From the IMG/VR virus record IMGVR_UViG_3300032268_000986, positions 186,001-250,000 of that record: a stretch of DNA of 64,000 bases, one strand, 5' to 3'. Under the pieces are notes generated by a model. It was not told the DNA's origin and did no database searches. It was given only the letters and a program-made list of their open reading frames with translations. Of this stretch, positions 28,501 to 63,062 are shown one piece after another (position 1 is the first letter of the stretch; the number at the start of each line of letters is the position of its first letter). A program made the position numbers and the translations under genes.

Positions 28501-28529
28501 ATTATAACAAATTGGCCTTTATTGGTCAA
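28501..28529 (-). promoter_or_regulatory. repeated early promoter
   Basis: TTGACC-17-TATAAT; the -35 box contains the upstream stop codon. Confidence 0.8.
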
Positions 28530-28821: not shown

Positions 28822-28850
28822 ATTATAGCAGATTGGGAATTATTGGTCAA
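28822..28850 (-). promoter_or_regulatory. repeated early promoter
   Basis: TTGACC-17-TATAAT. Confidence 0.8.
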
Positions 28851-29062: not shown

Positions 29063-29091
29063 ATTATAGCATTTGGGCAATTATTGGTCAA
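29063..29091 (-). promoter_or_regulatory. repeated early promoter
   Basis: TTGACC-17-TATAAT. Confidence 0.8.
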
Positions 29092-39344: not shown

Positions 39345-39373
39345 ATTATAGCAAATTGGGAATATTTGGTCAA
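39345..39373 (-). promoter_or_regulatory. repeated early promoter
   Basis: TTGACC-17-TATAAT. Confidence 0.8.
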
Positions 39374-39597: not shown

Positions 39598-39736
39598 ATG
39601 TGTATATTATAGCAAATTAGGCCATTTCAGTCAACCGGATAAAATTAGTGATTTAGTACTAATCTCAGTAGAAACCATGAGTTTTTGTGCAGTGCAACAT
39701 CATCTCATGGTAAATACTAGCACAAGGAGAAAAACT

Positions 39737-46214: not shown

Positions 46215-46271
46215 AATGCAGTAATTATAGCAAATTGGGAATTATTGGTCAATCAGACCAGTGTTGTGTTT

Positions 46272-46499: not shown

Positions 46500-46558
46500 G
46501 TTGGGCTCCTTTTTGTCAATCTATGCTATATTATAGCAAATTAGGAATATTTGGTCAA

Positions 46559-57045: not shown

Positions 57046-57837
57046 ATGCAACTAGCGTTTGATTTAATTTCTGACTTACACATTGACACATGGCCCACAG
57101 AGTTTTCCTGGTCTGAGCAGGCCACCAGTCCTATCTGTGTGGTGGCTGGTGATGTTTGTACTGATCGTGCCCAACTGGTAACGGTACTCAAGCATCTGGG
57201 ACAGTGTTATCAAGCAGTGTTCTATATTGATGGCAACAGCGAGCATCGTGATTATCTTGACAACCTAGGTGCCAGTTATAATGACCTTGCCCGGCAAATT
57301 CGACGTATCCCAAATGTGGTTTACCTGCAGGACAATGTGATTGTGATTGATGGCGTTGCAATTTTAGGCACCAATGGTTGGTGGGGATTTGACTTTGACT
57401 TGTCCATAGACCCTGAGCAATCTGAACTCTGGTACCGAGAGCGTCACCAGTTGAACCCTGCTGATACTCTTGCCATACGAAAAATGAGCAATACCGATGC
57501 CACGTACATGATCAACAGTGTCAGCAGATTGCAAACACACGCCGATGTCAAACACATTGTCATGGTCACTCACACTGTGCCTGATCCTGCATTGATAGCA
57601 CACGACATTGATCTTGACGGTAGCATGAGATTCAATGTCATGGGCAATCGGTTCATGATGCAGGCGCTGGCCGCTGACACTGAGAAAAAAATACACACCT
57701 GGTGCTTTGGACACTATCATGGATCAGTGGATCAGACCCGGGCCAATGTTAGATTTGTCAACAACTGTCGGGGTCGAGGTGACACAGACTATTCTCAATA
57801 TGTGTACCACCCTCGACGCATTGTGATCAACTATTAA
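57046..57837 (+). CDS. metallophosphoesterase
   Basis: SDLH, AGD, GNSE (His replaced), THTVP, FGHYH. Confidence 0.8.
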   Translation: MQLAFDLISDLHIDTWPTEFSWSEQATSPICVVAGDVCTDRAQLVTVLKHLGQCYQAVFYIDGNSEHRDYLDNLGASYNDLARQIRRIPNVVYLQDNVIVIDGVAILGTNGWWGFDFDLSIDPEQSELWYRERHQLNPADTLAIRKMSNTDATYMINSVSRLQTHADVKHIVMVTHTVPDPALIAHDIDLDGSMRFNVMGNRFMMQALAADTEKKIHTWCFGHYHGSVDQTRANVRFVNNCRGRGDTDYSQYVYHPRRIVINY

Positions 57838-58142
57838 TTTTCTTCAGGTTCTAGTTTGATTTGCAAAGGATAACTTTGCGAGCGAGCACTTATTGTAACT
57901 TCAATACCTTTTTGTTCAGCCAGTTCGTATGGTAACACCGCTACCACAGCCGAACCAGCTTCATGGATATCCACAGTGATACGTTCAGCAGTTTCTGCGT
58001 TGTAGTTGAAATATTCAATCAGACTTTCAATCACAAATTCCATAGTGGTTTGATTGTCATTGATATACACCACACGATACATTGGAGGCTCCTTGATATC
58101 CGTGGCAGGTTTAATTTTAATAACTGAGTCAGTTTGTGGCAT
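57834..58142 (-). CDS. clpS: ClpS adaptor
   Basis: PPMYRVVYINDNQTTMEFV..L...F....A..I...IH..G.AVV...YE.AEQK...YPL. Confidence 0.92.
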   Translation of the reverse strand: MPQTDSVIKIKPATDIKEPPMYRVVYINDNQTTMEFVIESLIEYFNYNAETAERITVDIHEAGSAVVAVLPYELAEQKGIEVTISARSQSYPLQIKLEPEEN

Positions 58143-58198
58143 TTTTTGTCCTTGTTGCAGTGGCAGCACTGTGCTGCCACTGTATTTACACAATTATA

Positions 58199-58651
58199 TT
58201 AGGCTGTGTATGTGATAGCAATGGCCTTTGGCTTGGCTTCCTCAGGAACTTCACGTTTTAAGTGAACACTCAAGATACCAAGTTCAAGATGTGCATTGGT
58301 GATTTCCACATGATCTGCCAACTGAAATTCTCTACGGAAATCTCTGTTGCTGATGCCTTTGTGCAAGTAGTTTGGCACAATCTTTTCGCTGTCAGGCTGA
58401 TATTCTTTGCCTTCAATGATCAAGAACTTTTTGTCCTTGGTAACTGAAAGATTGTCAAGTCCAAATCCGGCCACCGCAAGACTTATCATGTACTCATCTT
58501 CATTGATTTGTACAATGTTGTAGGGTGGATAGTTTGTTGAGCTTTGCTGAGCACTCACACGCATGAGTTCATCAAACATGTTATCAAAACCGATACCAAA
58601 TTTGGTGAGTGTGGGAATGTCGAAAGATCGAAGGGTGAGAGTTTTTGTCAT
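58199..58651 (-). CDS. small heat-shock protein (IbpA/Hsp20)
   Basis: IGFD, NYPPYNI, LAVAGF, YLHKGIS.R.F.R.F.LA, GIL...L...PEE.KP. Confidence 0.95.
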   Translation of the reverse strand: MTKTLTLRSFDIPTLTKFGIGFDNMFDELMRVSAQQSSTNYPPYNIVQINEDEYMISLAVAGFGLDNLSVTKDKKFLIIEGKEYQPDSEKIVPNYLHKGISNRDFRREFQLADHVEITNAHLELGILSVHLKREVPEEAKPKAIAITYTA

Positions 58652-58710
58652 TTGTTTTCTCCTTTATTAAGCAAGATGACTTTGATGTAGCCCCACCATG
58701 GGCACTACAT
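58652..58710 (-). promoter_or_regulatory. ROSE-like RNA thermometer in the hsp20 leader
   Basis: 5' hairpin plus UCUUGCU-N-AAGGAGA. Confidence 0.55.
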
Positions 58711-58776
58711 GTTTATTTATTATACACGAAAAAAAAAACTATATTTTGTTATTTAGGTCAAACTAAATGTTTGTTA

Positions 58777-59001
58777 TTAGAACAATTTTTTAGGAAGCTC
58801 TTGCTCGCGTAGTTTTCGCTGCCAGCGTTTTTTTGCAGCAGCGGCCTTGAGTTTGCGTTCAGTAGTGGGCTTGACGTAGCATTCACGGCTGCGCAAATCA
58901 TCCAGCAGTCCCGATGTTTGAATTTTTTTCTTGAACTTGCGCAGGGCCTTGTCTACGTTGCCATCTTGCACCAGTACTGATCTACCGTGTAATTTAGTCA
59001 T
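58777..59001 (-). CDS. rpsU: ribosomal protein bS21
   Basis: VDKALRKFKKK....G.L..LRSRECYVKPTTERK. Confidence 0.9.
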   Translation of the reverse strand: MTKLHGRSVLVQDGNVDKALRKFKKKIQTSGLLDDLRSRECYVKPTTERKLKAAAAKKRWQRKLREQELPKKLF

Positions 59002-60196
59002 TTGTTGTGTTGAGTGCGCAGGGATTGTTGATCAAGTCAGTACCAATATTGACTTGTTCAATCCCTTGCTCACGATATTTAACCAAATTGAACATATGAG
59101 GCAACAGCACTCGCTCAAGTTCGCTGTGCAGACCACGAGCTCCTGTACGGCTGGTCATGGTTCGTTTTGCAATGACCTCTAGTGCAGGGACATCAAAATT
59201 TAATTCAACTTTGTCTTGGGCAAACAACCAACGATATTGTGAAACATAGTTGTGTTTTACATCAGTGAGAATCTTTATAAGATCGTCCTGTGTGAGTTCT
59301 TGCAGGGCCACCCAACTGGGAAAACGTCCCACAAACTCAGGAATCATGCCAAACTTGATCAAATCTTCAGGTGTGGTCTGTGTCAAAGTTGCTTGTTCTG
59401 TGTGCTTGGTTAGATCAGCCGCAAACCCAATTGAAGTGCCCTTGACTCGATTCTTGACCACAGTGTCCAAGCCTACAAATGCGCCGCCGGCAATGAACAA
59501 GATGTTTGTGGTGTCAATTTCAACCATGTCGCCCGATGGGTGTTTGCGATTACCAGTGGGAGTTACTCTGCACTTGGTGCCTTCCACCAGCTTGAGCAGG
59601 GCCTGTTGCACACCTTCCCCTGACACATCTCGAGTGATACTGGCACTCTCGCTGCGCCGACTGATCTTGTCAATTTCGTCAATGAACACAATACCGCGTT
59701 GTGTTTTTTCTACGTCGCCGCCGGCAGCGGCAAACAGTCGACTGATCAAACTTTCAACGTCGTCGCCCACGTACCCTGCTTCTGTGAGGCTGGTGGCATC
59801 GGCGATCACAAACGGAACGTCAAGGTAACGAGCCACACTGCGAGCCAGCAGTGTTTTGCCTGACCCAGTGGGGCCCAGCATGAGAATATTGCATTTTTCA
59901 ATCTCAGTGTCAGATTTCAAATTGTTAATGCGTTTGTAGTGGTTGACAATGGCCACTGCCAATACCTGCTTGGCCTGGTCTTGACCGATAACATATTGGT
60001 CAAGATGTGCTTTAATACGAATTGGATCCAGCGTGGGTTCAGAACTGGTCGCTGGCAATACATCATCAGTCAGCAATGAACCGCAGAGGTCTACACACTC
60101 GTTGCAAATTGCAACAGTGTCGCCAACAATGAGTTTGGTCACTGCATCTTTGTGTTTGCCACAAAAACTACAGGTATCAGGTATGTCTTTTTTCAT
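58994..60196 (-). CDS. clpX: ClpX ATPase
   Basis: CSFC...ICNEC zinc domain, GPTGSGKT, DATSLTEAGYVG, RDVSGEGVQQ, IGF loop, GARGL. Confidence 0.96.
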   Translation of the reverse strand: MKKDIPDTCSFCGKHKDAVTKLIVGDTVAICNECVDLCGSLLTDDVLPATSSEPTLDPIRIKAHLDQYVIGQDQAKQVLAVAIVNHYKRINNLKSDTEIEKCNILMLGPTGSGKTLLARSVARYLDVPFVIADATSLTEAGYVGDDVESLISRLFAAAGGDVEKTQRGIVFIDEIDKISRRSESASITRDVSGEGVQQALLKLVEGTKCRVTPTGNRKHPSGDMVEIDTTNILFIAGGAFVGLDTVVKNRVKGTSIGFAADLTKHTEQATLTQTTPEDLIKFGMIPEFVGRFPSWVALQELTQDDLIKILTDVKHNYVSQYRWLFAQDKVELNFDVPALEVIAKRTMTSRTGARGLHSELERVLLPHMFNLVKYREQGIEQVNIGTDLINNPCALNTTND

Positions 60197-61596
60197 TCGG
60201 TATGATGATTGTTAGATTTAGATTCCAGGCGTTGCGCAATTTGTTCTTGCTCACTCTCACTCAGGAAATCAGGATCGTATTGCCCTTCAGCCAGCAATGA
60301 GATCAAGTGATCAATGTATGCAGTATCGTAAGTATAACTGTCAGCTATGGTTTTGTCAACTTCAATCCACTCATCACCATTGTGTTTGAACACACGATTA
60401 GGGATTGAATCAGTTCTAATATAAGTATCACCGCGAACAGCGTCCTGTGGAAACTCTGCGCCAAACCCAGTCTTGGAAGTGGGCTCAATTAATTTCATCC
60501 AAGGCAACTCATCTATTTCTCCCAGTCTGTGTCGGAATCTTTGTCCCTTGAGTGTGAGATGTGGGTTGAGCTCTTTCCATTTTTTAATGGCAGCTTTTTC
60601 TGTTGGGGTTGTATCGTGATGATCGTCGGGCTCTTCTTCAGCATCTTGAGTTGGTTGCTGAGGCTGGTGGACCATGGGAGTTAAATTTTCAAAATGCACA
60701 AATGGTTTGTTTAGATATGGGTGTTGTTCCAGTATAGATTTTTCTTCAACTGCCACTTCTGGAACCACCGGCGTTGGGGTAACAGTACAATCTTCTTCAG
60801 TGGGCGATTTTTCGACGTCTGGTTCCTGGCGTTTTTTATTTTCTCGTGCCCACTTCATGCTTTCAGTTGAAGCCAACACCATCATGATGGCCAGGGGATC
60901 AAACACTATCACCAGCAAAATAATAACCCAACGCACTGCTCGTTCCAGCAAGTTGGCATCAGGGTCGTCGCCGTAAATCAAGGCCGCAATGTATTTTATT
61001 GGACCTACTTCGGCTTCCACCTTACGTATTTCCGCTCGTATGGGTGCGGCTTCTTCATTGAGAGCACCAATGAGTTTTTGGTTGGCTTCAATGCTCTTGG
61101 CTAAAGCAGTCCTGTCACGGGCCTGGGCTCGACGAATAGCATTAGATTTAGTGGCACCTTCTTCTGTTGTGCTCCTGGCCATGACTTGATCAACAGCCTC
61201 ATCCATTTGGCGAAGTTGCCGGCGATCAGCTTCGATATTCTCTCGTGCTGTTTTGATCTTTTCATCATAAACTGCAATTTTGCTCTGCACATCACCGCTT
61301 ATTATGTCCTGGTCCAAGTGGGCCTTGCTCAAGAAACCAAAAATACCCATGGAGGTAATCACCATGAGCATAGCCACTGCTGGCACAAGATACAGTTTCA
61401 TAGCCAGGCGGCACTGGTTCCAGTACTCATGCAGCCACACAGTTACCACTACCTTGGCAACCTCTAACATACCGCCCATGACAATGATGGGAATGACTGC
61501 TGATGCAAAAATTGCAGTCAAACCAATAATGCTGTACCAGGCAGCAATGGCGCTGAGACTCAGCGCCACCAGTAAGGTTATTATACTAAGGAGCAT
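60193..61596 (-). CDS. membrane-anchored coiled-coil protein
   Basis: N-terminal TMs, TSMGIFGFLS, EVGPIKY, VFDPLA. Confidence 0.75.
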   Translation of the reverse strand: MLLSIITLLVALSLSAIAAWYSIIGLTAIFASAVIPIIVMGGMLEVAKVVVTVWLHEYWNQCRLAMKLYLVPAVAMLMVITSMGIFGFLSKAHLDQDIISGDVQSKIAVYDEKIKTARENIEADRRQLRQMDEAVDQVMARSTTEEGATKSNAIRRAQARDRTALAKSIEANQKLIGALNEEAAPIRAEIRKVEAEVGPIKYIAALIYGDDPDANLLERAVRWVIILLVIVFDPLAIMMVLASTESMKWARENKKRQEPDVEKSPTEEDCTVTPTPVVPEVAVEEKSILEQHPYLNKPFVHFENLTPMVHQPQQPTQDAEEEPDDHHDTTPTEKAAIKKWKELNPHLTLKGQRFRHRLGEIDELPWMKLIEPTSKTGFGAEFPQDAVRGDTYIRTDSIPNRVFKHNGDEWIEVDKTIADSYTYDTAYIDHLISLLAEGQYDPDFLSESEQEQIAQRLESKSNNHHTE

Positions 61597-61600
61597 GCAT

Positions 61601-61924
61601 TTATTTATTGTTAGTTTCGGTCAGCATCACTGCATACTTTAGACTGCACCAGGTGCCAAACGTGGGATCTGGCACTTCAAACCACACTCGAATTGTTTCT
61701 TTTTTCCAGTTGTTGTCTAGTCTACGTTTCACATGCGGTTGTCCGCGCCAGCCAGTTTTACCAAACATGGCATTGGCTTCGCGAATGATGTTGTACCAGG
61801 ATTTTACTCCTGCCCTACCCACCGCAATATTGAACCAAATACGGTGCATGACCGGGGGCGTTAATTTAAGAGGGCTGAGAGGCTCAGACATACTCAACGT
61901 AGAGGTTTGAACTTCAACAGACAT
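61601..61924 (-). CDS. hypothetical protein
   Basis: AAAGGAC RBS; WFEVPD..F.TW.SLKY. Confidence 0.65.
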   Translation of the reverse strand: MSVEVQTSTLSMSEPLSPLKLTPPVMHRIWFNIAVGRAGVKSWYNIIREANAMFGKTGWRGQPHVKRRLDNNWKKETIRVWFEVPDPTFGTWCSLKYAVMLTETNNK

Positions 61925-62107
61925 AGAGTCCTTTCACTGTTTGTGTCCTTAATGAGCATACACCGGACCAGTGCCCGGTTTTGGCCGAAACCAAGGACAG
62001 TGCCTCATCCTATGTGATTTACATCTACATGCCACGGAACCAGCGGGCCCGGGTTGTCGACTCACCCCGCCAGGTCCATTAGATAACACGATTTCCCCGA
62101 TCATGCC
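61925..62107 (-). ncRNA. putative structured leader/ncRNA (~185 nt)
   Basis: consensus promoter at 62113-62141 followed by several G-U-containing stems and a UUCG loop. Confidence 0.45.
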
Positions 62108-62112
62108 ATGTA

Positions 62113-62141
62113 ATTATACACACAGATCAGTGAAGTGTCAA
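62113..62141 (-). promoter_or_regulatory. sigma70 consensus promoter
   Basis: TTGACA-17-TATAAT. Confidence 0.8.
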
Positions 62142-62157
62142 TTGATTTGGAAACTTA

Positions 62158-62619
62158 TTAAGTTTTAGAGTTCTTGCGTGTCATTTCACACACCAGCAAG
62201 AATTTGTTGTAGGCTTCTTGCACAGCTGGGTGAGTCATGAGTTTGGCAGCTTCTTTTTGAAGCGCCGTTACACCTGCTTCCACAACGTCATGAGTGCTTG
62301 CACCGTTCAAAGTGCAAAGTTCATCGCCAAACTCTTTGGCCAGTTGGTGCCATGCACGTTGTTGACCCAGTGTGAGCGGAGTTCTCTGTGGGCGCAGTTC
62401 GCTGGCCTTGCGCATGGCTTCACACATGGCATCTTCGGCCACACGTCCAGCCGCAATCATGGCAGCATAATTGGGATCAATATGGTAACGACGACTCTGT
62501 CCGCCGGGGTAGCACATCACAAGATGTGTACCTTGAGAGAAACTGTCCAAGTACTCACTGTCGTACTCACTCACAGGCACATACCTGCGGCCACGTTTTT
62601 CATAATAGATCTTTTTCAT
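62158..62619 (-). CDS. conserved phage protein
   Basis: Y.K.GRRYVPV.EY. Confidence 0.7.
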   Translation of the reverse strand: MKKIYYEKRGRRYVPVSEYDSEYLDSFSQGTHLVMCYPGGQSRRYHIDPNYAAMIAAGRVAEDAMCEAMRKASELRPQRTPLTLGQQRAWHQLAKEFGDELCTLNGASTHDVVEAGVTALQKEAAKLMTHPAVQEAYNKFLLVCEMTRKNSKT

Positions 62620-63062
62620 CGATATTCTTTATCCAATTTAACATTGGTCAACCCTGCTAGAGTTTGAAATTGATCCCAGGCCGCTTTCACAGCGGGTCGA
62701 GTTTCAAGTTCAGAATCCGGCAACACCGTTTCCAACCAGATTTCGCGTCGACGGCTTGGATGCGCACCAAACTTGCGAGGCTGATGTAGCTTGCCAGTTT
62801 CCCACAGCTCAATGCTGACACTACGAAATCGATCTTCGTCTTCAAAACCGTAGCTTTCCCATTCAGGATTACTACCGCTGAAAAATCCACGCATGCTCTG
62901 CATGCCAGAGCCGCCGCCGTAACCTTGCCAAATTCCTTGCCACTGCTCGTCATCACGTGGGTCAAAATCTGTACGAGTAATCAACACCAACACATCAGAG
63001 ATGTCTACCTTGCCGTCCACAATATCGCGCACACACCGACTGTAACTGAGACCAATTTTCAT
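62616..63062 (-). CDS. conserved phage protein
   Basis: IG.S.SRCVRDIV.G.V...DV...GKLHQPR. Confidence 0.7.
   Translation of the reverse strand: MKIGLSYSRCVRDIVDGKVDISDVLVLITRTDFDPRDDEQWQGIWQGYGGGSGMQSMRGFFSGSNPEWESYGFEDEDRFRSVSIELWETGKLHQPRKFGAHPSRRREIWLETVLPDSELETRPAVKAAWDQFQTLAGLTNVKLDKEYR

What the first reader, a model, noticed from the sequence alone, without database searches (positions are those of the whole stretch)
61925..62141. Highly structured ~185-nt leader RNA with a decoy/true Shine-Dalgarno switch
Seen on the - strand after a perfect TTGACA-17-TATAAT: hairpin GGCAUGAU/AUCGUGUU; AUCUA/UAGAU enclosing AUGGACCUGGCGGG/CCCGCUGGUUCCGU; then CACUG/CAGUG and UGUCCUU/AAGGACA enclosing a GGU-UUCG-GCC hairpin and ACCGGGC/GUCCGGU. 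The segment GUCCUU (61993-61998) can pair either with a decoy AAGGAC (61945-61950) or with the real RBS AAGGAC (61928-61933) of gene 61601-61924. AUGAG(G)CA/UGCUCAU offers a competing or pseudoknot pairing. The region also holds a 51-codon frame starting near the predicted TSS (62104-61949). Inference: an undescribed riboswitch-like or attenuator RNA, or a standalone phage ncRNA.
Basis: partly seen in the sequence, partly recalled or inferred. Interest (0 to 1): 0.72.

Follow-up and report, generated by a model that had tools for sequence, protein, structure and literature searches.

The report
New structured phage leader RNA
A family of freshwater giant phages carries a previously undescribed, strongly conserved ~260-base folded RNA that starts at a perfect promoter, wraps up the ribosome-binding site and first 26 codons of an operon's first gene, and accumulates as a discrete RNA in lake samples.

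Summary

**What holds**
- The perfect TTGACA-17-TATAAT promoter is there.
- No Rfam family matches.

**What does not hold**
- The 5' hairpin, the AUGAGGCA/UGCUCAU pairing and the 51-codon frame are not conserved.
- The decoy/true Shine-Dalgarno (SD) switch is not conserved across the family.

**What is actually there**
- The transcript's first 12 bases pair with codons 23-27 of the downstream 107-aa gene (helix P1, window 62106-62095 with 61857-61846).
- Further helices (P6-P10) use codons 1-18, and synonymous sites there are frozen.
- The SD's GG pairs with bases +3 to +6.
- The full 264-nt RNA folds better than every shuffle (z = -3.1).

**Expression**
- Four lake metatranscriptomes each hold one 234-257-nt contig covering exactly this RNA, and nothing from the flanking genes.
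- The contig ends lie opposite each other inside P1, which suggests an RNase III-like cut.

**Most likely role:** a folding gate on translation of a 107aa-membrane protein-ClpX-S21 operon, processed into a stable RNA. The function is inferred, not shown.

The parts
62113..62141 (-). Sigma-70-type promoter, TTGACA (62141-62136), 17-nt spacer, TATAAT (62118-62113). The predicted transcription start is at about 62107-62106.
   Evidence: 12/12 match. (12/12 in 56 of 63 relatives; -10 end lies 6 or 8 nt before GCAUG). (15 near-consensus sites in the window against 0.36 expected, all on the - strand).
62095..62106 (-). P1 5' strand (GCAUGAUCGGGG), at the very 5' end of the transcript.
   Evidence: Twelve bp with 61857-61846; 96.6% of cells paired; 6 of 12 pairs show changes on both sides. 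GCAUG is invariant.
61846..61857 (-). P1 3' strand (CCCCGGUCAUGC), which is codons 23-27 of the 107-aa gene. It contains the near-invariant AUG of Met26 (61849-61847).
   Evidence: Amino acids 24-25 vary in step with the P1 partner bases.
62014..62089 (-). P2 domain.
- P2: 62089-87 with 62016-14.
- P2a: 62084-80 with 62027-23.
- P2b: 62079-75 with 62038-34.
- P2c: 62071-66 with 62047-42.
- Variable apex: 62065-48.
- Invariant GGCA bulge: 62033-30.
   Evidence: covariation in every helix. (the apex varies, is shortened in L045/L049 and absent in L112).
62007..62013 (-). Conserved junction strand J2/6 (AUAGGAU; family consensus UAGG(U/A)U).
62003..62006 (-). P6 5' strand (GAGG), pairing with 61873-61870 (CCUC, codons 18-19).
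   Evidence: 100% paired in 63 sequences. Pair types at the second pair: CG 34, AU 25, UA 2, UG 2.
61935..62002 (-). P3 domain.
- P3a: 62002-61998 with 61939-35.
- P3b: 61997-93 with 61950-46.
- P4: 61992-90 with 61985-83.
- Invariant AAAAC: 61982-78.
- P5: 61977-73 with 61968-63.
- Invariant GUAUGC: 61961-56.
61919..61934 (-). Translation initiation region.
- SD AAAGGA: 61934-29.
- AUG: 61924-22.
- P10: SD GGAC (61931-28) pairs with GUCU (61922-19).
   Evidence: SD GGA goes with codon-2 UCU in 42 sequences and GGU with ACU in 21, with no exception, though this may be one evolutionary event; low predicted unpaired probability at -8 to -5 and +2 to +5 across the family.
61870..61918 (-). Arm inside the coding region, followed by the P6 3' strand.
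- P7: 61918-14 with 61878-74.
- P8: 61912-05 with 61889-82.
- P9: 61904-02 with 61895-93.
- P6 3' strand: 61873-70.
   Evidence: P7 is 100% paired with 4 of 5 pairs compensatory. P8 has 4 of 6 compensatory. P9 is invariant and deleted in one clade.
61858..61869 (-). Conserved junction strand J6/1 (UUAAAUUAACGC), which is codons 19-23. CUU (Leu19) and ACG (Thr22) are fixed in 62 of 62 sequences.
   Evidence: frozen synonymous sites.
61854..62097 (-). The discrete RNA species seen in lake metatranscriptomes (about 244 nt).
   Evidence: Contigs span 61854-62097, 61855-62089, 61856-62089 and 61858-62102 (the last with adapter letters), with 0-1 differences and depth 6-43. Flanks in 61000-63000 are about 0.
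61601..61924 (-). The 107-aa gene. It has a ferredoxin-like fold and matches no known family. It is the first gene of the operon 107aa - 467aa (60193-61596) - ClpX (58994-60196) - bS21 (58777-59001).

Best explanation
The flagged segment is the 5' two-thirds of a conserved structured RNA of about 260 nt, found in a clade of freshwater jumbo phages.

**Shown**
- Transcription from a consensus sigma-70 promoter starts at or next to the first base of helix P1.
- P1 is a 12-13-bp long-range helix between the transcript's 5' end and codons 23-27 of the first gene.
- P1 closes two nested multi-helix junctions: P1/P2/P6 outside, and P6/P3/P10/P7 inside.
- The SD and AUG sit in the inner junction. The SD's GG and the G of AUG are paired in a short helix (P10) that stacks on P7.
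- Codons 1-27 are both translated sequence and RNA structure.
- A discrete ~244-nt RNA spanning this element is far more abundant in lake metatranscriptomes than its flanks.

**Inferred**
- The folded state is closed to 30S binding.
- Its closing strands are only transcribed at +47 to +79. Ribosomes can therefore load on the nascent, still-open transcript, or when a factor opens the fold, but not after folding is complete.
- The leader thus gates how often the 107aa-membrane protein-ClpX-S21 operon is translated from a very strong promoter.
- Folded transcripts are cut across P1 by a double-strand-specific nuclease, most likely host RNase III. This uncouples the leader from the message and leaves the stable RNA.
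For: **Family and specificity**
- 23 metagenome loci matched a sequence pattern.
- 71 of 78 IMG/VR pattern hits pass the covariance model at 93-222 bits.
- 0 of 63 pattern hits in cellular genomes pass.
- The own genome holds one copy.
- No Rfam family matches.

**Structure**
- On the model-fitted alignment, 94.7% of cells are paired and 30 of 38 pairs are compensatory.
- On a MAFFT-only alignment of the full RNA, 96.9% are paired and 29 of 49 pairs are compensatory. Slid controls give 28-43%, and 0 of 500 shuffles reach the observed value.
- The full RNA has z = -3.10.

**Dual coding**
- Four- and six-fold sites are frozen in codons 1-28 (about 0.5 bit), against about 1.35 bit in the rest of the gene.
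- Relatives without the leader also lack the N-terminal 17-20 residues.

**SD pairing:** (association; predicted accessibility).

**Expression and ends**
- One search gives four runs, each with a single contig that matches exactly.
- The 5' end is at 62097 in two runs, one with adapter letters. The 3' ends are at 61854-61858.
- G at 62097 pairs with C at 61855 in P1.

**Context:** the gene order is conserved, with overlapping stops and starts.
Against: - No experiment links the fold to translation.
- P10 is only 3-4 bp, and its one covarying pair may reflect a single evolutionary event.
- Thermodynamic prediction gives similar accessibility of the initiation region for the nascent and the full-length RNA.
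- The transcript ends come from assembled contigs, not raw reads. The expected 2-nt 3' overhang is only approximately matched.
- The adapter reading at 62098-62102 is my inference from one mismatch.
- The phage encodes no RNase III, and the host is unknown.
- The junction sequences are extremely conserved and the RNA is abundant. That fits a ligand- or protein-binding RNA, or a trans-acting RNA, at least as well as a passive folding gate.
Confidence: 0.5

Rival explanations
1. Excised, trans-acting stable ncRNA. P1 works like an rRNA processing stalk: cleavage releases the ~244-nt folded RNA, which is the main product of the strong promoter and acts elsewhere, for example on ribosomes or host factors. 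The overlap with the gene start is secondary.
For: - The discrete RNA is much more abundant than the operon body in four runs.
- The two ends face each other in a closing helix.
- Junction strands are invariant.
- The promoter is perfect.
Against: - In all 63 full-length cases the RNA overlaps the start of the same gene family. It is never found on its own or elsewhere in the genome.
- After the cut only about 3 bp of P1 remain.
- No target is known.
Confidence: 0.3
2. Autogenous protein-binding operator. A product of the operon (the 107-aa ferredoxin-like protein, or phage bS21) binds the conserved junctions and stabilises the closed fold, repressing its own operon.
For: - The link between the RNA and this gene family is strict.
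- The 107-aa protein is basic, rich in aromatic residues and has a ferredoxin-like (RRM-like topology) fold.
- The initiation region is embedded in structure, as in the rpsO, thrS and T4 gene 32 operators (my own knowledge).
Against: - The fold search gives no specific RNA-binding relative (best E about 0.02-0.1, TM below 0.5).
- Similarity of the RNA to 16S rRNA is no better than shuffles, which argues against rRNA-site mimicry for S21.
Confidence: 0.2
3. Metabolite- or ion-sensing riboswitch whose aptamer is formed by the conserved three-way junctions, with P10/P7/P1 as the expression platform.
For: - The size, the nested junctions with invariant unpaired bases and the SD involvement resemble large riboswitches.
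- A possible GGCA/UGCC tertiary pairing exists.
Against: - The downstream genes are not metabolic or transport genes.
- The element is found only in phages.
- No Rfam aptamer matches.
- The structure runs 78 nt into the coding region, which is unusual for riboswitches.
Confidence: 0.12
4. One reading: a ~185-nt leader in which GUCCUU toggles between a decoy AAGGAC and the true SD AAGGAC.
For: Both pairings are possible in the window (6 bp each), and at least 5 bp with the SD region is possible in 25 of 63 relatives.
Against: - In 32 of 63 relatives no more than 3 bp can form with the SD region, while P3b covaries with its 'decoy' partner.
- The model misses P1 and P6-P10.
- The 5' hairpin and the proposed pseudoknot are not conserved.
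Confidence: 0.07
5. RNA thermometer controlling a proteostasis operon (ClpX, with Hsp20 and ClpS next door).
For: - The SD is held in a weak 3-4-bp helix.
- The neighbourhood encodes ClpX, Hsp20 and ClpS.
Against: - Known thermometers are small and poorly conserved in sequence. This RNA is 260 nt with invariant junctions.
- Hsp20 has its own promoter and leader.
- No ROSE or fourU family matches.
Confidence: 0.05
6. The region encodes the 51-codon protein (62104-61949).
For: The frame is open in the window.
Against: - In relatives it stops after 6-69 codons, most often 6-16.
- It has no Pfam or PHROG hit.
- Substitutions follow base-pairing, not codons.
Confidence: 0.01

Closest known systems
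5' leader of the maturation (A-protein) gene of RNA phage MS2: long-distance pairing and translational control by delayed RNA folding (my own knowledge of van Duin and co-workers' work)
   Same: The initiation region is closed by long-range pairing within a multi-branch fold. Ribosomes could load only before the closing strands are made or folded.
   Different: - The MS2 fold is a ~130-nt cloverleaf in which an upstream sequence pairs directly with the SD.
- Here the closing strands lie inside the coding region (+47 to +79).
- The fold is twice as large, is DNA-encoded behind a sigma-70 promoter, and appears to be cut out.
- There is no sequence or Rfam relationship.
RNase III processing helices: rRNA processing stalks, T7 early-mRNA sites, the lambda N leader, and the E. 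coli pnp and rnc leaders (my own knowledge)
   Same: - A double-stranded helix formed by distant 5' and 3' segments encloses a structured RNA.
- The transcript ends face each other in the helix.
- It sits on a phage early-type transcript.
   Different: - P1 is only 12-13 bp.
- Cleavage and its enzyme are inferred from contig ends, not shown.
- The enclosed RNA contains an SD, a start codon and 23 codons.
Large riboswitch aptamers and T-box leaders
   Same: It lies in a 5' leader, has several junctions with invariant unpaired nucleotides, shows strong covariation, and the SD takes part in the structure.
   Different: - No ligand or tRNA logic is evident.
- It is not upstream of metabolic genes.
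- It extends 26 codons into the gene.
- It matches none of 4227 Rfam models.
Autogenous translational operators (rpsO pseudoknot, thrS operator, T4 gene 32 leader)
   Same: The initiation region is embedded in a conserved structure at the head of the regulated gene or operon.
   Different: - Those are 50-130 nt and mimic a known RNA target of the regulator.
- Here no mimicry of 16S rRNA is detectable, and the putative regulator is unknown.

Membership tests
Any Rfam 15 family (riboswitches, ribozymes, leaders, sRNAs, RNase P, tmRNA, group I/II introns) | A covariance-model match at the gathering score, or at least a suggestive E-value | tested here: not met
   0 matches in the whole window; only chance-level hits (E of 0.8 or more, 9-17 bits) in 61500-62500, none on the element's strand and span.
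tRNA-like / tmRNA | Acceptor and T-arm geometry detectable by ARAGORN | tested here: not met
   no tRNA or tmRNA in the window.
Riboswitch | A conserved aptamer with invariant junction nucleotides and covarying helices | tested here: inconclusive
   Searches show such an architecture, but the architecture alone does not show ligand binding.
Riboswitch | Association with genes for metabolism or transport of a ligand | tested here: not met
   The downstream genes are an unknown 107-aa protein, a membrane/coiled-coil protein, ClpX and bS21.
Riboswitch | Direct, selective ligand binding that changes the fold | not testable with these tools
   Needs in-line probing, SHAPE or ITC.
Transcription attenuator | An intrinsic terminator (GC hairpin plus U tract) between leader and gene, with a competing antiterminator | tested here: not met
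   One search finds no terminator-like site in 61846-62112 on the - strand. The observed RNA 3' ends lie inside P1, not after a U tract.
RNase III processing site | A regular double helix of about one turn or more | tested here: met
   P1 is 12 bp in the window. The longest contiguous run is 12-13 bp in 39 of 63 relatives, with a mean duplex energy of -19.8 kcal/mol.
RNase III processing site | Staggered cuts on both strands leaving a 2-nt 3' overhang | tested here: inconclusive
   The 5' end is at 62097 (two runs) and the 3' ends at 61854-61858. The base at 62097 pairs with 61855, giving an apparent overhang of 0-1 nt from contigs that may lack terminal bases.
RNase III processing site | Dependence on RNase III | not testable with these tools
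   The phage has no RNase III gene. The host enzyme would have to be tested.
Ribosomal-protein-type leader (rRNA-site mimic for bS21) | Sequence or structure resemblance to the protein's rRNA binding site | tested here: not met
   Local alignment of 10 family members to E. coli 16S rRNA gives scores of 18-26, against a shuffle mean of 20 and sd of 2.3.
RNA thermometer (ROSE, fourU) | A short hairpin that pairs the SD, upstream of a heat-shock gene, or a family model match | tested here: not met
   No model match. The element is 260 nt with invariant junctions. A weak SD helix (P10) does exist.
Leader peptide / small protein gene | An open frame conserved in relatives | tested here: not met
   the frame from the GCAUG AUG stops after 6-69 codons, with a mode of 6.
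Kissing-loop dimerisation site (HIV-1 DIS type) | A 9-nt hairpin loop with a 6-nt self-complementary core flanked by purines, conserved as self-complementary | tested here: inconclusive
   the loop is GA-GUCGAC-A in the window and GA-AUCGAU-A in the main clade, with a second CCCGGG/CCUAGG/ACCGGU motif. The loop is not self-complementary in the L033 clade, is deleted in L045/L049 and is absent in L112.

The most novel reading that the evidence does not exclude
A bifunctional RNA. A cut across P1 releases an abundant ~244-nt folded RNA that carries its own SD, AUG and 23 codons, and that acts in trans, for example on ribosomes remodelled by the phage's bS21.
- The same cut leaves an almost leaderless message starting about 4 nt before the near-invariant AUG of Met26.
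- Processing would thus switch the first gene between a 107-aa product and an 82-aa product.
- The AUG inside P1 is invariant although the rest of P1 covaries.
- Met is not needed by the protein: it is Leu in leaderless relatives.
Probability: 0.12. Interest if true: 0.9.

Novelty: new variant of a known kind. Interest (0 to 1): 0.76.

Why it matters
- Large, sequence-invariant, heavily covarying RNAs are rare finds, and most known ones turned out to be riboswitches, ribozymes or ribonucleoprotein cores.
- This one is restricted to uncultured freshwater jumbo phages and matches no curated family.
- It is demonstrably present as a discrete RNA in lakes and heads an operon that encodes ClpX and a ribosomal protein.
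- Its layout is unusual: a closing helix joins the first transcribed bases to codons 23-27, and the ribosome-binding site and 26 dual-use codons lie inside the fold.
- It gives a directly testable case of how giant phages control early expression, and a clear example of overlapping protein and RNA-structure constraints.
- It can be tested with simple reporters and in-vitro RNase III and probing assays, without culturing the phage.

Tried and rejected
1. **Rfam.** The search at gathering and at permissive thresholds found nothing.
2. **GenBank phage records.** blastn search found no match.
3. **16S rRNA mimicry.** I suspected it from the GGGGUGA.UCGA.AAC and CCCGGGCC motifs in the P2c apex. It is rejected: alignment scores fall within shuffles, and the apex varies or is absent in some clades.
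4. **tRNA/tmRNA.** None found.
5. **Function of the 107-aa protein.**
   - Pfam and PHROGs give nothing.
   - The AlphaFold model (pLDDT 81) has a generic ferredoxin-like fold.
   - PDB and AFDB searches give no specific relative.
6. **Cellular genomes.** 63 loose-pattern hits, none passing the model.
7. **Phage-encoded RNase III.** Absent.
8. **Literature.** No description of this RNA was found. The published bS21 phages of Bacteroidetes have a different bS21 context. One search failed on a syntax error.
9. **Invariant tertiary pairings.** GCAUG/UAUGC (62106-02 with 61960-56) and GGCA/UGCC (62033-30 with 61958-55) are mutually exclusive. The sequences do not vary, so covariation cannot decide between them; only G-C/G-U variation at one GGCA/UGCC position is compatible with pairing.
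10. **P2c apex.** There are two alternative pairings: extension of P2c, or an inner GGGU/ACCY hairpin with a GGGCC bulge. This is left unresolved. Several clades extend the inner hairpin, while L045 cannot form it.
11. **Second clade in RNA runs.** Which part they hold is unverified.

Full report
**Setting.**
- The window is bases 186001-250000 of a 342,865-bp virus record, about 99% complete by CheckV.
- Genes around the finding all lie on the - strand:
  - a DNA ligase (63293 onward);
  - three small ORFs;
  - the flagged intergenic region;
  - a 107-aa ORF (61924-61601);
  - a 467-aa ORF with a weak DUF4407 match (61596-60193);
  - ClpX (60196-58994);
  - ribosomal protein bS21 (59001-58777).
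- Stops and starts of the last four genes overlap.
- Hsp20 and ClpS follow, behind a separate promoter-like site.

**Checking the observation.**
- The TTGACA-17-TATAAT site at 62141-62113 (- strand) is a 12/12 match.
- Rfam gives no match at gathering or permissive thresholds.
- On the single sequence, then, the 'highly structured' claim is not beyond chance. The case rests on relatives.

**Relatives.**
- Three IMG/VR contigs encode homologues of the 107-aa protein. One shares only 47% protein identity, yet it keeps the intergenic region far better than the protein and shows compensatory changes.
- A pattern from the most conserved stretch found 23 metagenome loci.
- Homologues of the protein led to further clades.
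- A looser, gene-independent pattern found 82 IMG/VR stretches and 63 stretches in cellular genomes.
- A covariance model built from 29 sequences recognised 71 of 78 new viral loci at 93-222 bits, and none of the 63 cellular hits.
- It found a single copy in the phage's own genome.
- Host contigs reach 100-360 kb and come from freshwater samples.
- In all 63 distinct full-length cases a 102-111-aa ORF of the same family starts at the same place (one is 83 aa).
- The promoter is 12/12 in 56 of the 63, with its -10 ending 6 or 8 nt before an invariant GCAUG.
- One protein clade (87 aa, loci L042-L044) has no leader at all. It also lacks the N-terminal 17-20 residues.

- The model-fitted alignment has 67 distinct sequences. 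On it, 94.7% of cells form standard pairs and 30 of 38 pairs show changes on both sides.
- No shuffle reaches these values, and sliding the partners by 1-3 columns drops pairing to 35-50%.
- This confirms P2a (AUCUA/UAGAU), P2b, P2c (GGCGGG/CCCGCU), P3a (CACUG/CAGUG), P3b (UCCUU/AAGGA), P4 and P5.
- It adds a 3-bp P2 (GUG/CAC, 62089-87 with 62016-14).
- The AUGAGGCA/UGCUCAU pairing fails too.

- I scanned all column pairs after adding 120 nt downstream. This revealed helices that use the coding region. I then tested them on a plain MAFFT alignment of 63 distinct sequences, which was not fitted to any structure.
- P1 joins 62106-62095 (GCAUGAUCGGGG) to 61857-61846 (CCCCGGUCAUGC, codons 23-27).
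  - It is 12 bp in the window.
  - The main clade has UCAAAG/CUUUGG, and other clades GGGC/GUCC.
  - Six of its 12 pairs are compensatory.
- P6 joins GAGG (62006-03) to CCUC (61873-70) and is paired in 63 of 63 sequences, with four pair types.
- P7 (61918-14 with 61878-74) is paired in 63 of 63, with 4 of 5 pairs compensatory.
- P8 and P9 complete an arm made of codons 3-17.
- Overall, 96.9% of cells are paired and 29 of 49 pairs are compensatory. Slid controls give 28-43%, and 0 of 500 shuffles match.
- With these boundaries the window's RNA (264 nt) has MFE -96.3 kcal/mol and z = -3.10, with no shuffle as stable. The MFE contains P1, P2, P3, P6 and P7-P9.
- The SD's GGAC (61931-28) can pair with GUCU (61922-19), forming P10.
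  - Across the family, SD GGA goes with codon 2 UCU (42 sequences) and GGU with ACU (21 sequences), without exception.
  - The second group may be a single lineage, so this may count as only one event.
- The result is two nested junctions, P1/P2/P6 and P6/P3/P10/P7, with invariant joining strands (UAGG.UG, AAAAC, GUAUGC, CUUAAA..AACGC, and the GGCA bulge).

**Coding and structure overlap.**
- Codons 1-27 stay open and in frame. The only indel is 3 nt, and amino-acid replacements are conservative.
- Their synonymous sites are frozen:
  - Ser2 TCT 41/41;
  - Ser8 TCT 56/57;
  - Ala9 GCG 39/40;
  - Leu19 CTT 62/62;
  - Thr22 ACG 62/62;
  - His27 CAC 61/61.
- Comparable sites in the folded domain carry 1.3-1.85 bits.
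- Where third positions or whole residues do vary (Val3, Ser18, residues 24-25), they vary together with their RNA partners.
- The predicted protein is disordered up to residue 18 and ferredoxin-like from residue 27. No specific structural relative was found.

**Expression in nature.**
- Six lake metatranscriptome runs hold about 10% of the words of a 2-kb stretch around the element.
- I laid four of them. Each has one contig of 234-257 nt with 0-1 differences:
  - 61854-62097;
  - 61855-62089;
  - 61856-62089;
  - 61858-62102.
- Depth is 6-43. Nothing of at least 95% identity covers the upstream gene or the rest of the operon, so this is RNA rather than contaminating DNA.
- In the deepest run the contig continues into GGAAGAGCACAC. 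I read this as Illumina adapter starting at 62098, which would explain that contig's single mismatch. That places a fixed molecule end at 62097, the same end as in another run.
- Base 62097 pairs with 61855 in P1, so both ends lie opposite each other inside the closing helix.
  - This is what a double-strand-specific cut would give.
  - It is not what termination or exonuclease trimming to a helix base would give.
- The evidence comes from contigs, so the ends are approximate.
- The phage has no RNase III gene.
- For another clade, 16 RNA runs hold 5-8% of a 2-kb stretch. I could not lay them.

**Mechanism.**
- *Shown:* the fold, its extent, the position of the SD and AUG within it, the dual coding, the promoter, the strict link to one operon, and the accumulation of a discrete RNA.
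- *Inferred:*
  - The completed fold hinders 30S binding, because P10 and P7 occupy -8 to +11 and are locked by P6 and P1.
  - The locking strands appear only after +47 to +79 are transcribed, so initiation would be confined to nascent or actively opened transcripts.
  - Folded transcripts would then be cut across P1.
- *Open:* I cannot separate this from three other possibilities. The conserved junctions may bind a protein of the operon, they may bind a small ligand, or the excised RNA may be the main product. These are listed as rivals with my estimates.
GUCCUU covaries with its 'decoy' partner, while complementarity to the SD region is 3 bp or fewer in 32 of 63 sequences.

**Comparison with known systems.**
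- The element works most like two things combined: the long-range, folding-timed closure of the initiation region in the MS2 maturation-gene leader, and RNase III processing helices that excise structured RNAs (rRNA stalks, T7 and lambda early transcripts).
- By the tests run, it is a member of none of these families.
  - There is no Rfam model match.
  - ARAGORN finds no tRNA or tmRNA.
  - No terminator is present.
  - It shows no 16S mimicry.
  - It is not upstream of metabolic genes.
- Two literature searches found no description of it. The published bS21-encoding phages of Bacteroidetes carry bS21 in a different gene context.

**Verdict.**
- This is a real, new RNA family of known general kind: a structured 5' regulatory or processed RNA.
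- Its architecture is unusual and there is in-situ evidence for it.

Noticed in passing
window 28501-28529, 28822-28850, 29063-29091, 39345-39373, 39606-39634, 46224-46252, 46530-46558 (- strand): Seven near-consensus promoters share not only the hexamers but also the spacer (TTGACCAAtAaTTcCCAATtTGCTATAAT). This looks like a repeated promoter cassette, or a promoter with a built-in operator. All 15 near-consensus sigma-70 sites in the window are on the - strand, against 0.36 expected by chance.
   Followed up: no
window 58777-59001, 58994-60196, 58199-58651, 57834-58193 (- strand): The phage encodes ribosomal protein bS21, ClpX, an Hsp20-family protein and ClpS side by side. bS21 overlaps the end of ClpX and is the last gene of the leader-headed operon.
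   Followed up: partly
window 58652-58776 (- strand): The gap between bS21 and Hsp20 holds a T-run, a TTGACC...TATAAT promoter-like site and a 5' leader. The leader has a GC-rich hairpin (GUAGUGCCC/GGGGCUAC) ahead of a strong AAGGAG site. The fold has z = -1.78. Conservation was not examined.
   Followed up: partly
window 62048-62065 (- strand) and the same place in relatives: The P2c apex carries two self-complementary motifs that stay self-complementary while changing sequence.
- First motif: GUCGAC, AUCGAU, AGAUCU or GAUCGAUC.
- Second motif: CCCGGG, CCUAGG, ACCGGU or AACCGGUU.
- The first sits in a 9-nt loop of the form purine-purine-hexamer-A, as in retroviral dimerisation loops.
- The apex is not universal: it is lost in L045/L049 and L112, and not self-complementary in the L033 clade.
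   Followed up: partly
L042-L044 (metagenome contigs): A shorter (87-aa) relative of the 107-aa protein follows a Bax1-I family gene after only 23 nt. It has no leader RNA and no N-terminal extension, so it is a natural 'minus-RNA' comparison.
   Followed up: partly
window 61601-61609 (- strand): The last two codons of the 107-aa gene are also frozen (GGT 44/44, AAA 61/61). This is probably because they overlap the ribosome-binding region and start of the next gene at 61596.
   Followed up: no
L112:6221-6373: A minimal natural variant of the RNA lacks almost the whole P2c arm (UGGAUUCUUCCGUG in place of about 45 nt). It keeps the junction strands, P3-P5 and the coding-region helices.
   Followed up: no
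window 61956-61961, 62030-62033, 62102-62106 (- strand): The invariant GUAUGC is complementary both to the invariant 5' GCAUG and to the invariant GGCA bulge. Its sequence also resembles the P1 3' strand (UCAUGC). This could be a tertiary contact or a co-transcriptional folding intermediate. No covariation is available to decide.
   Followed up: partly
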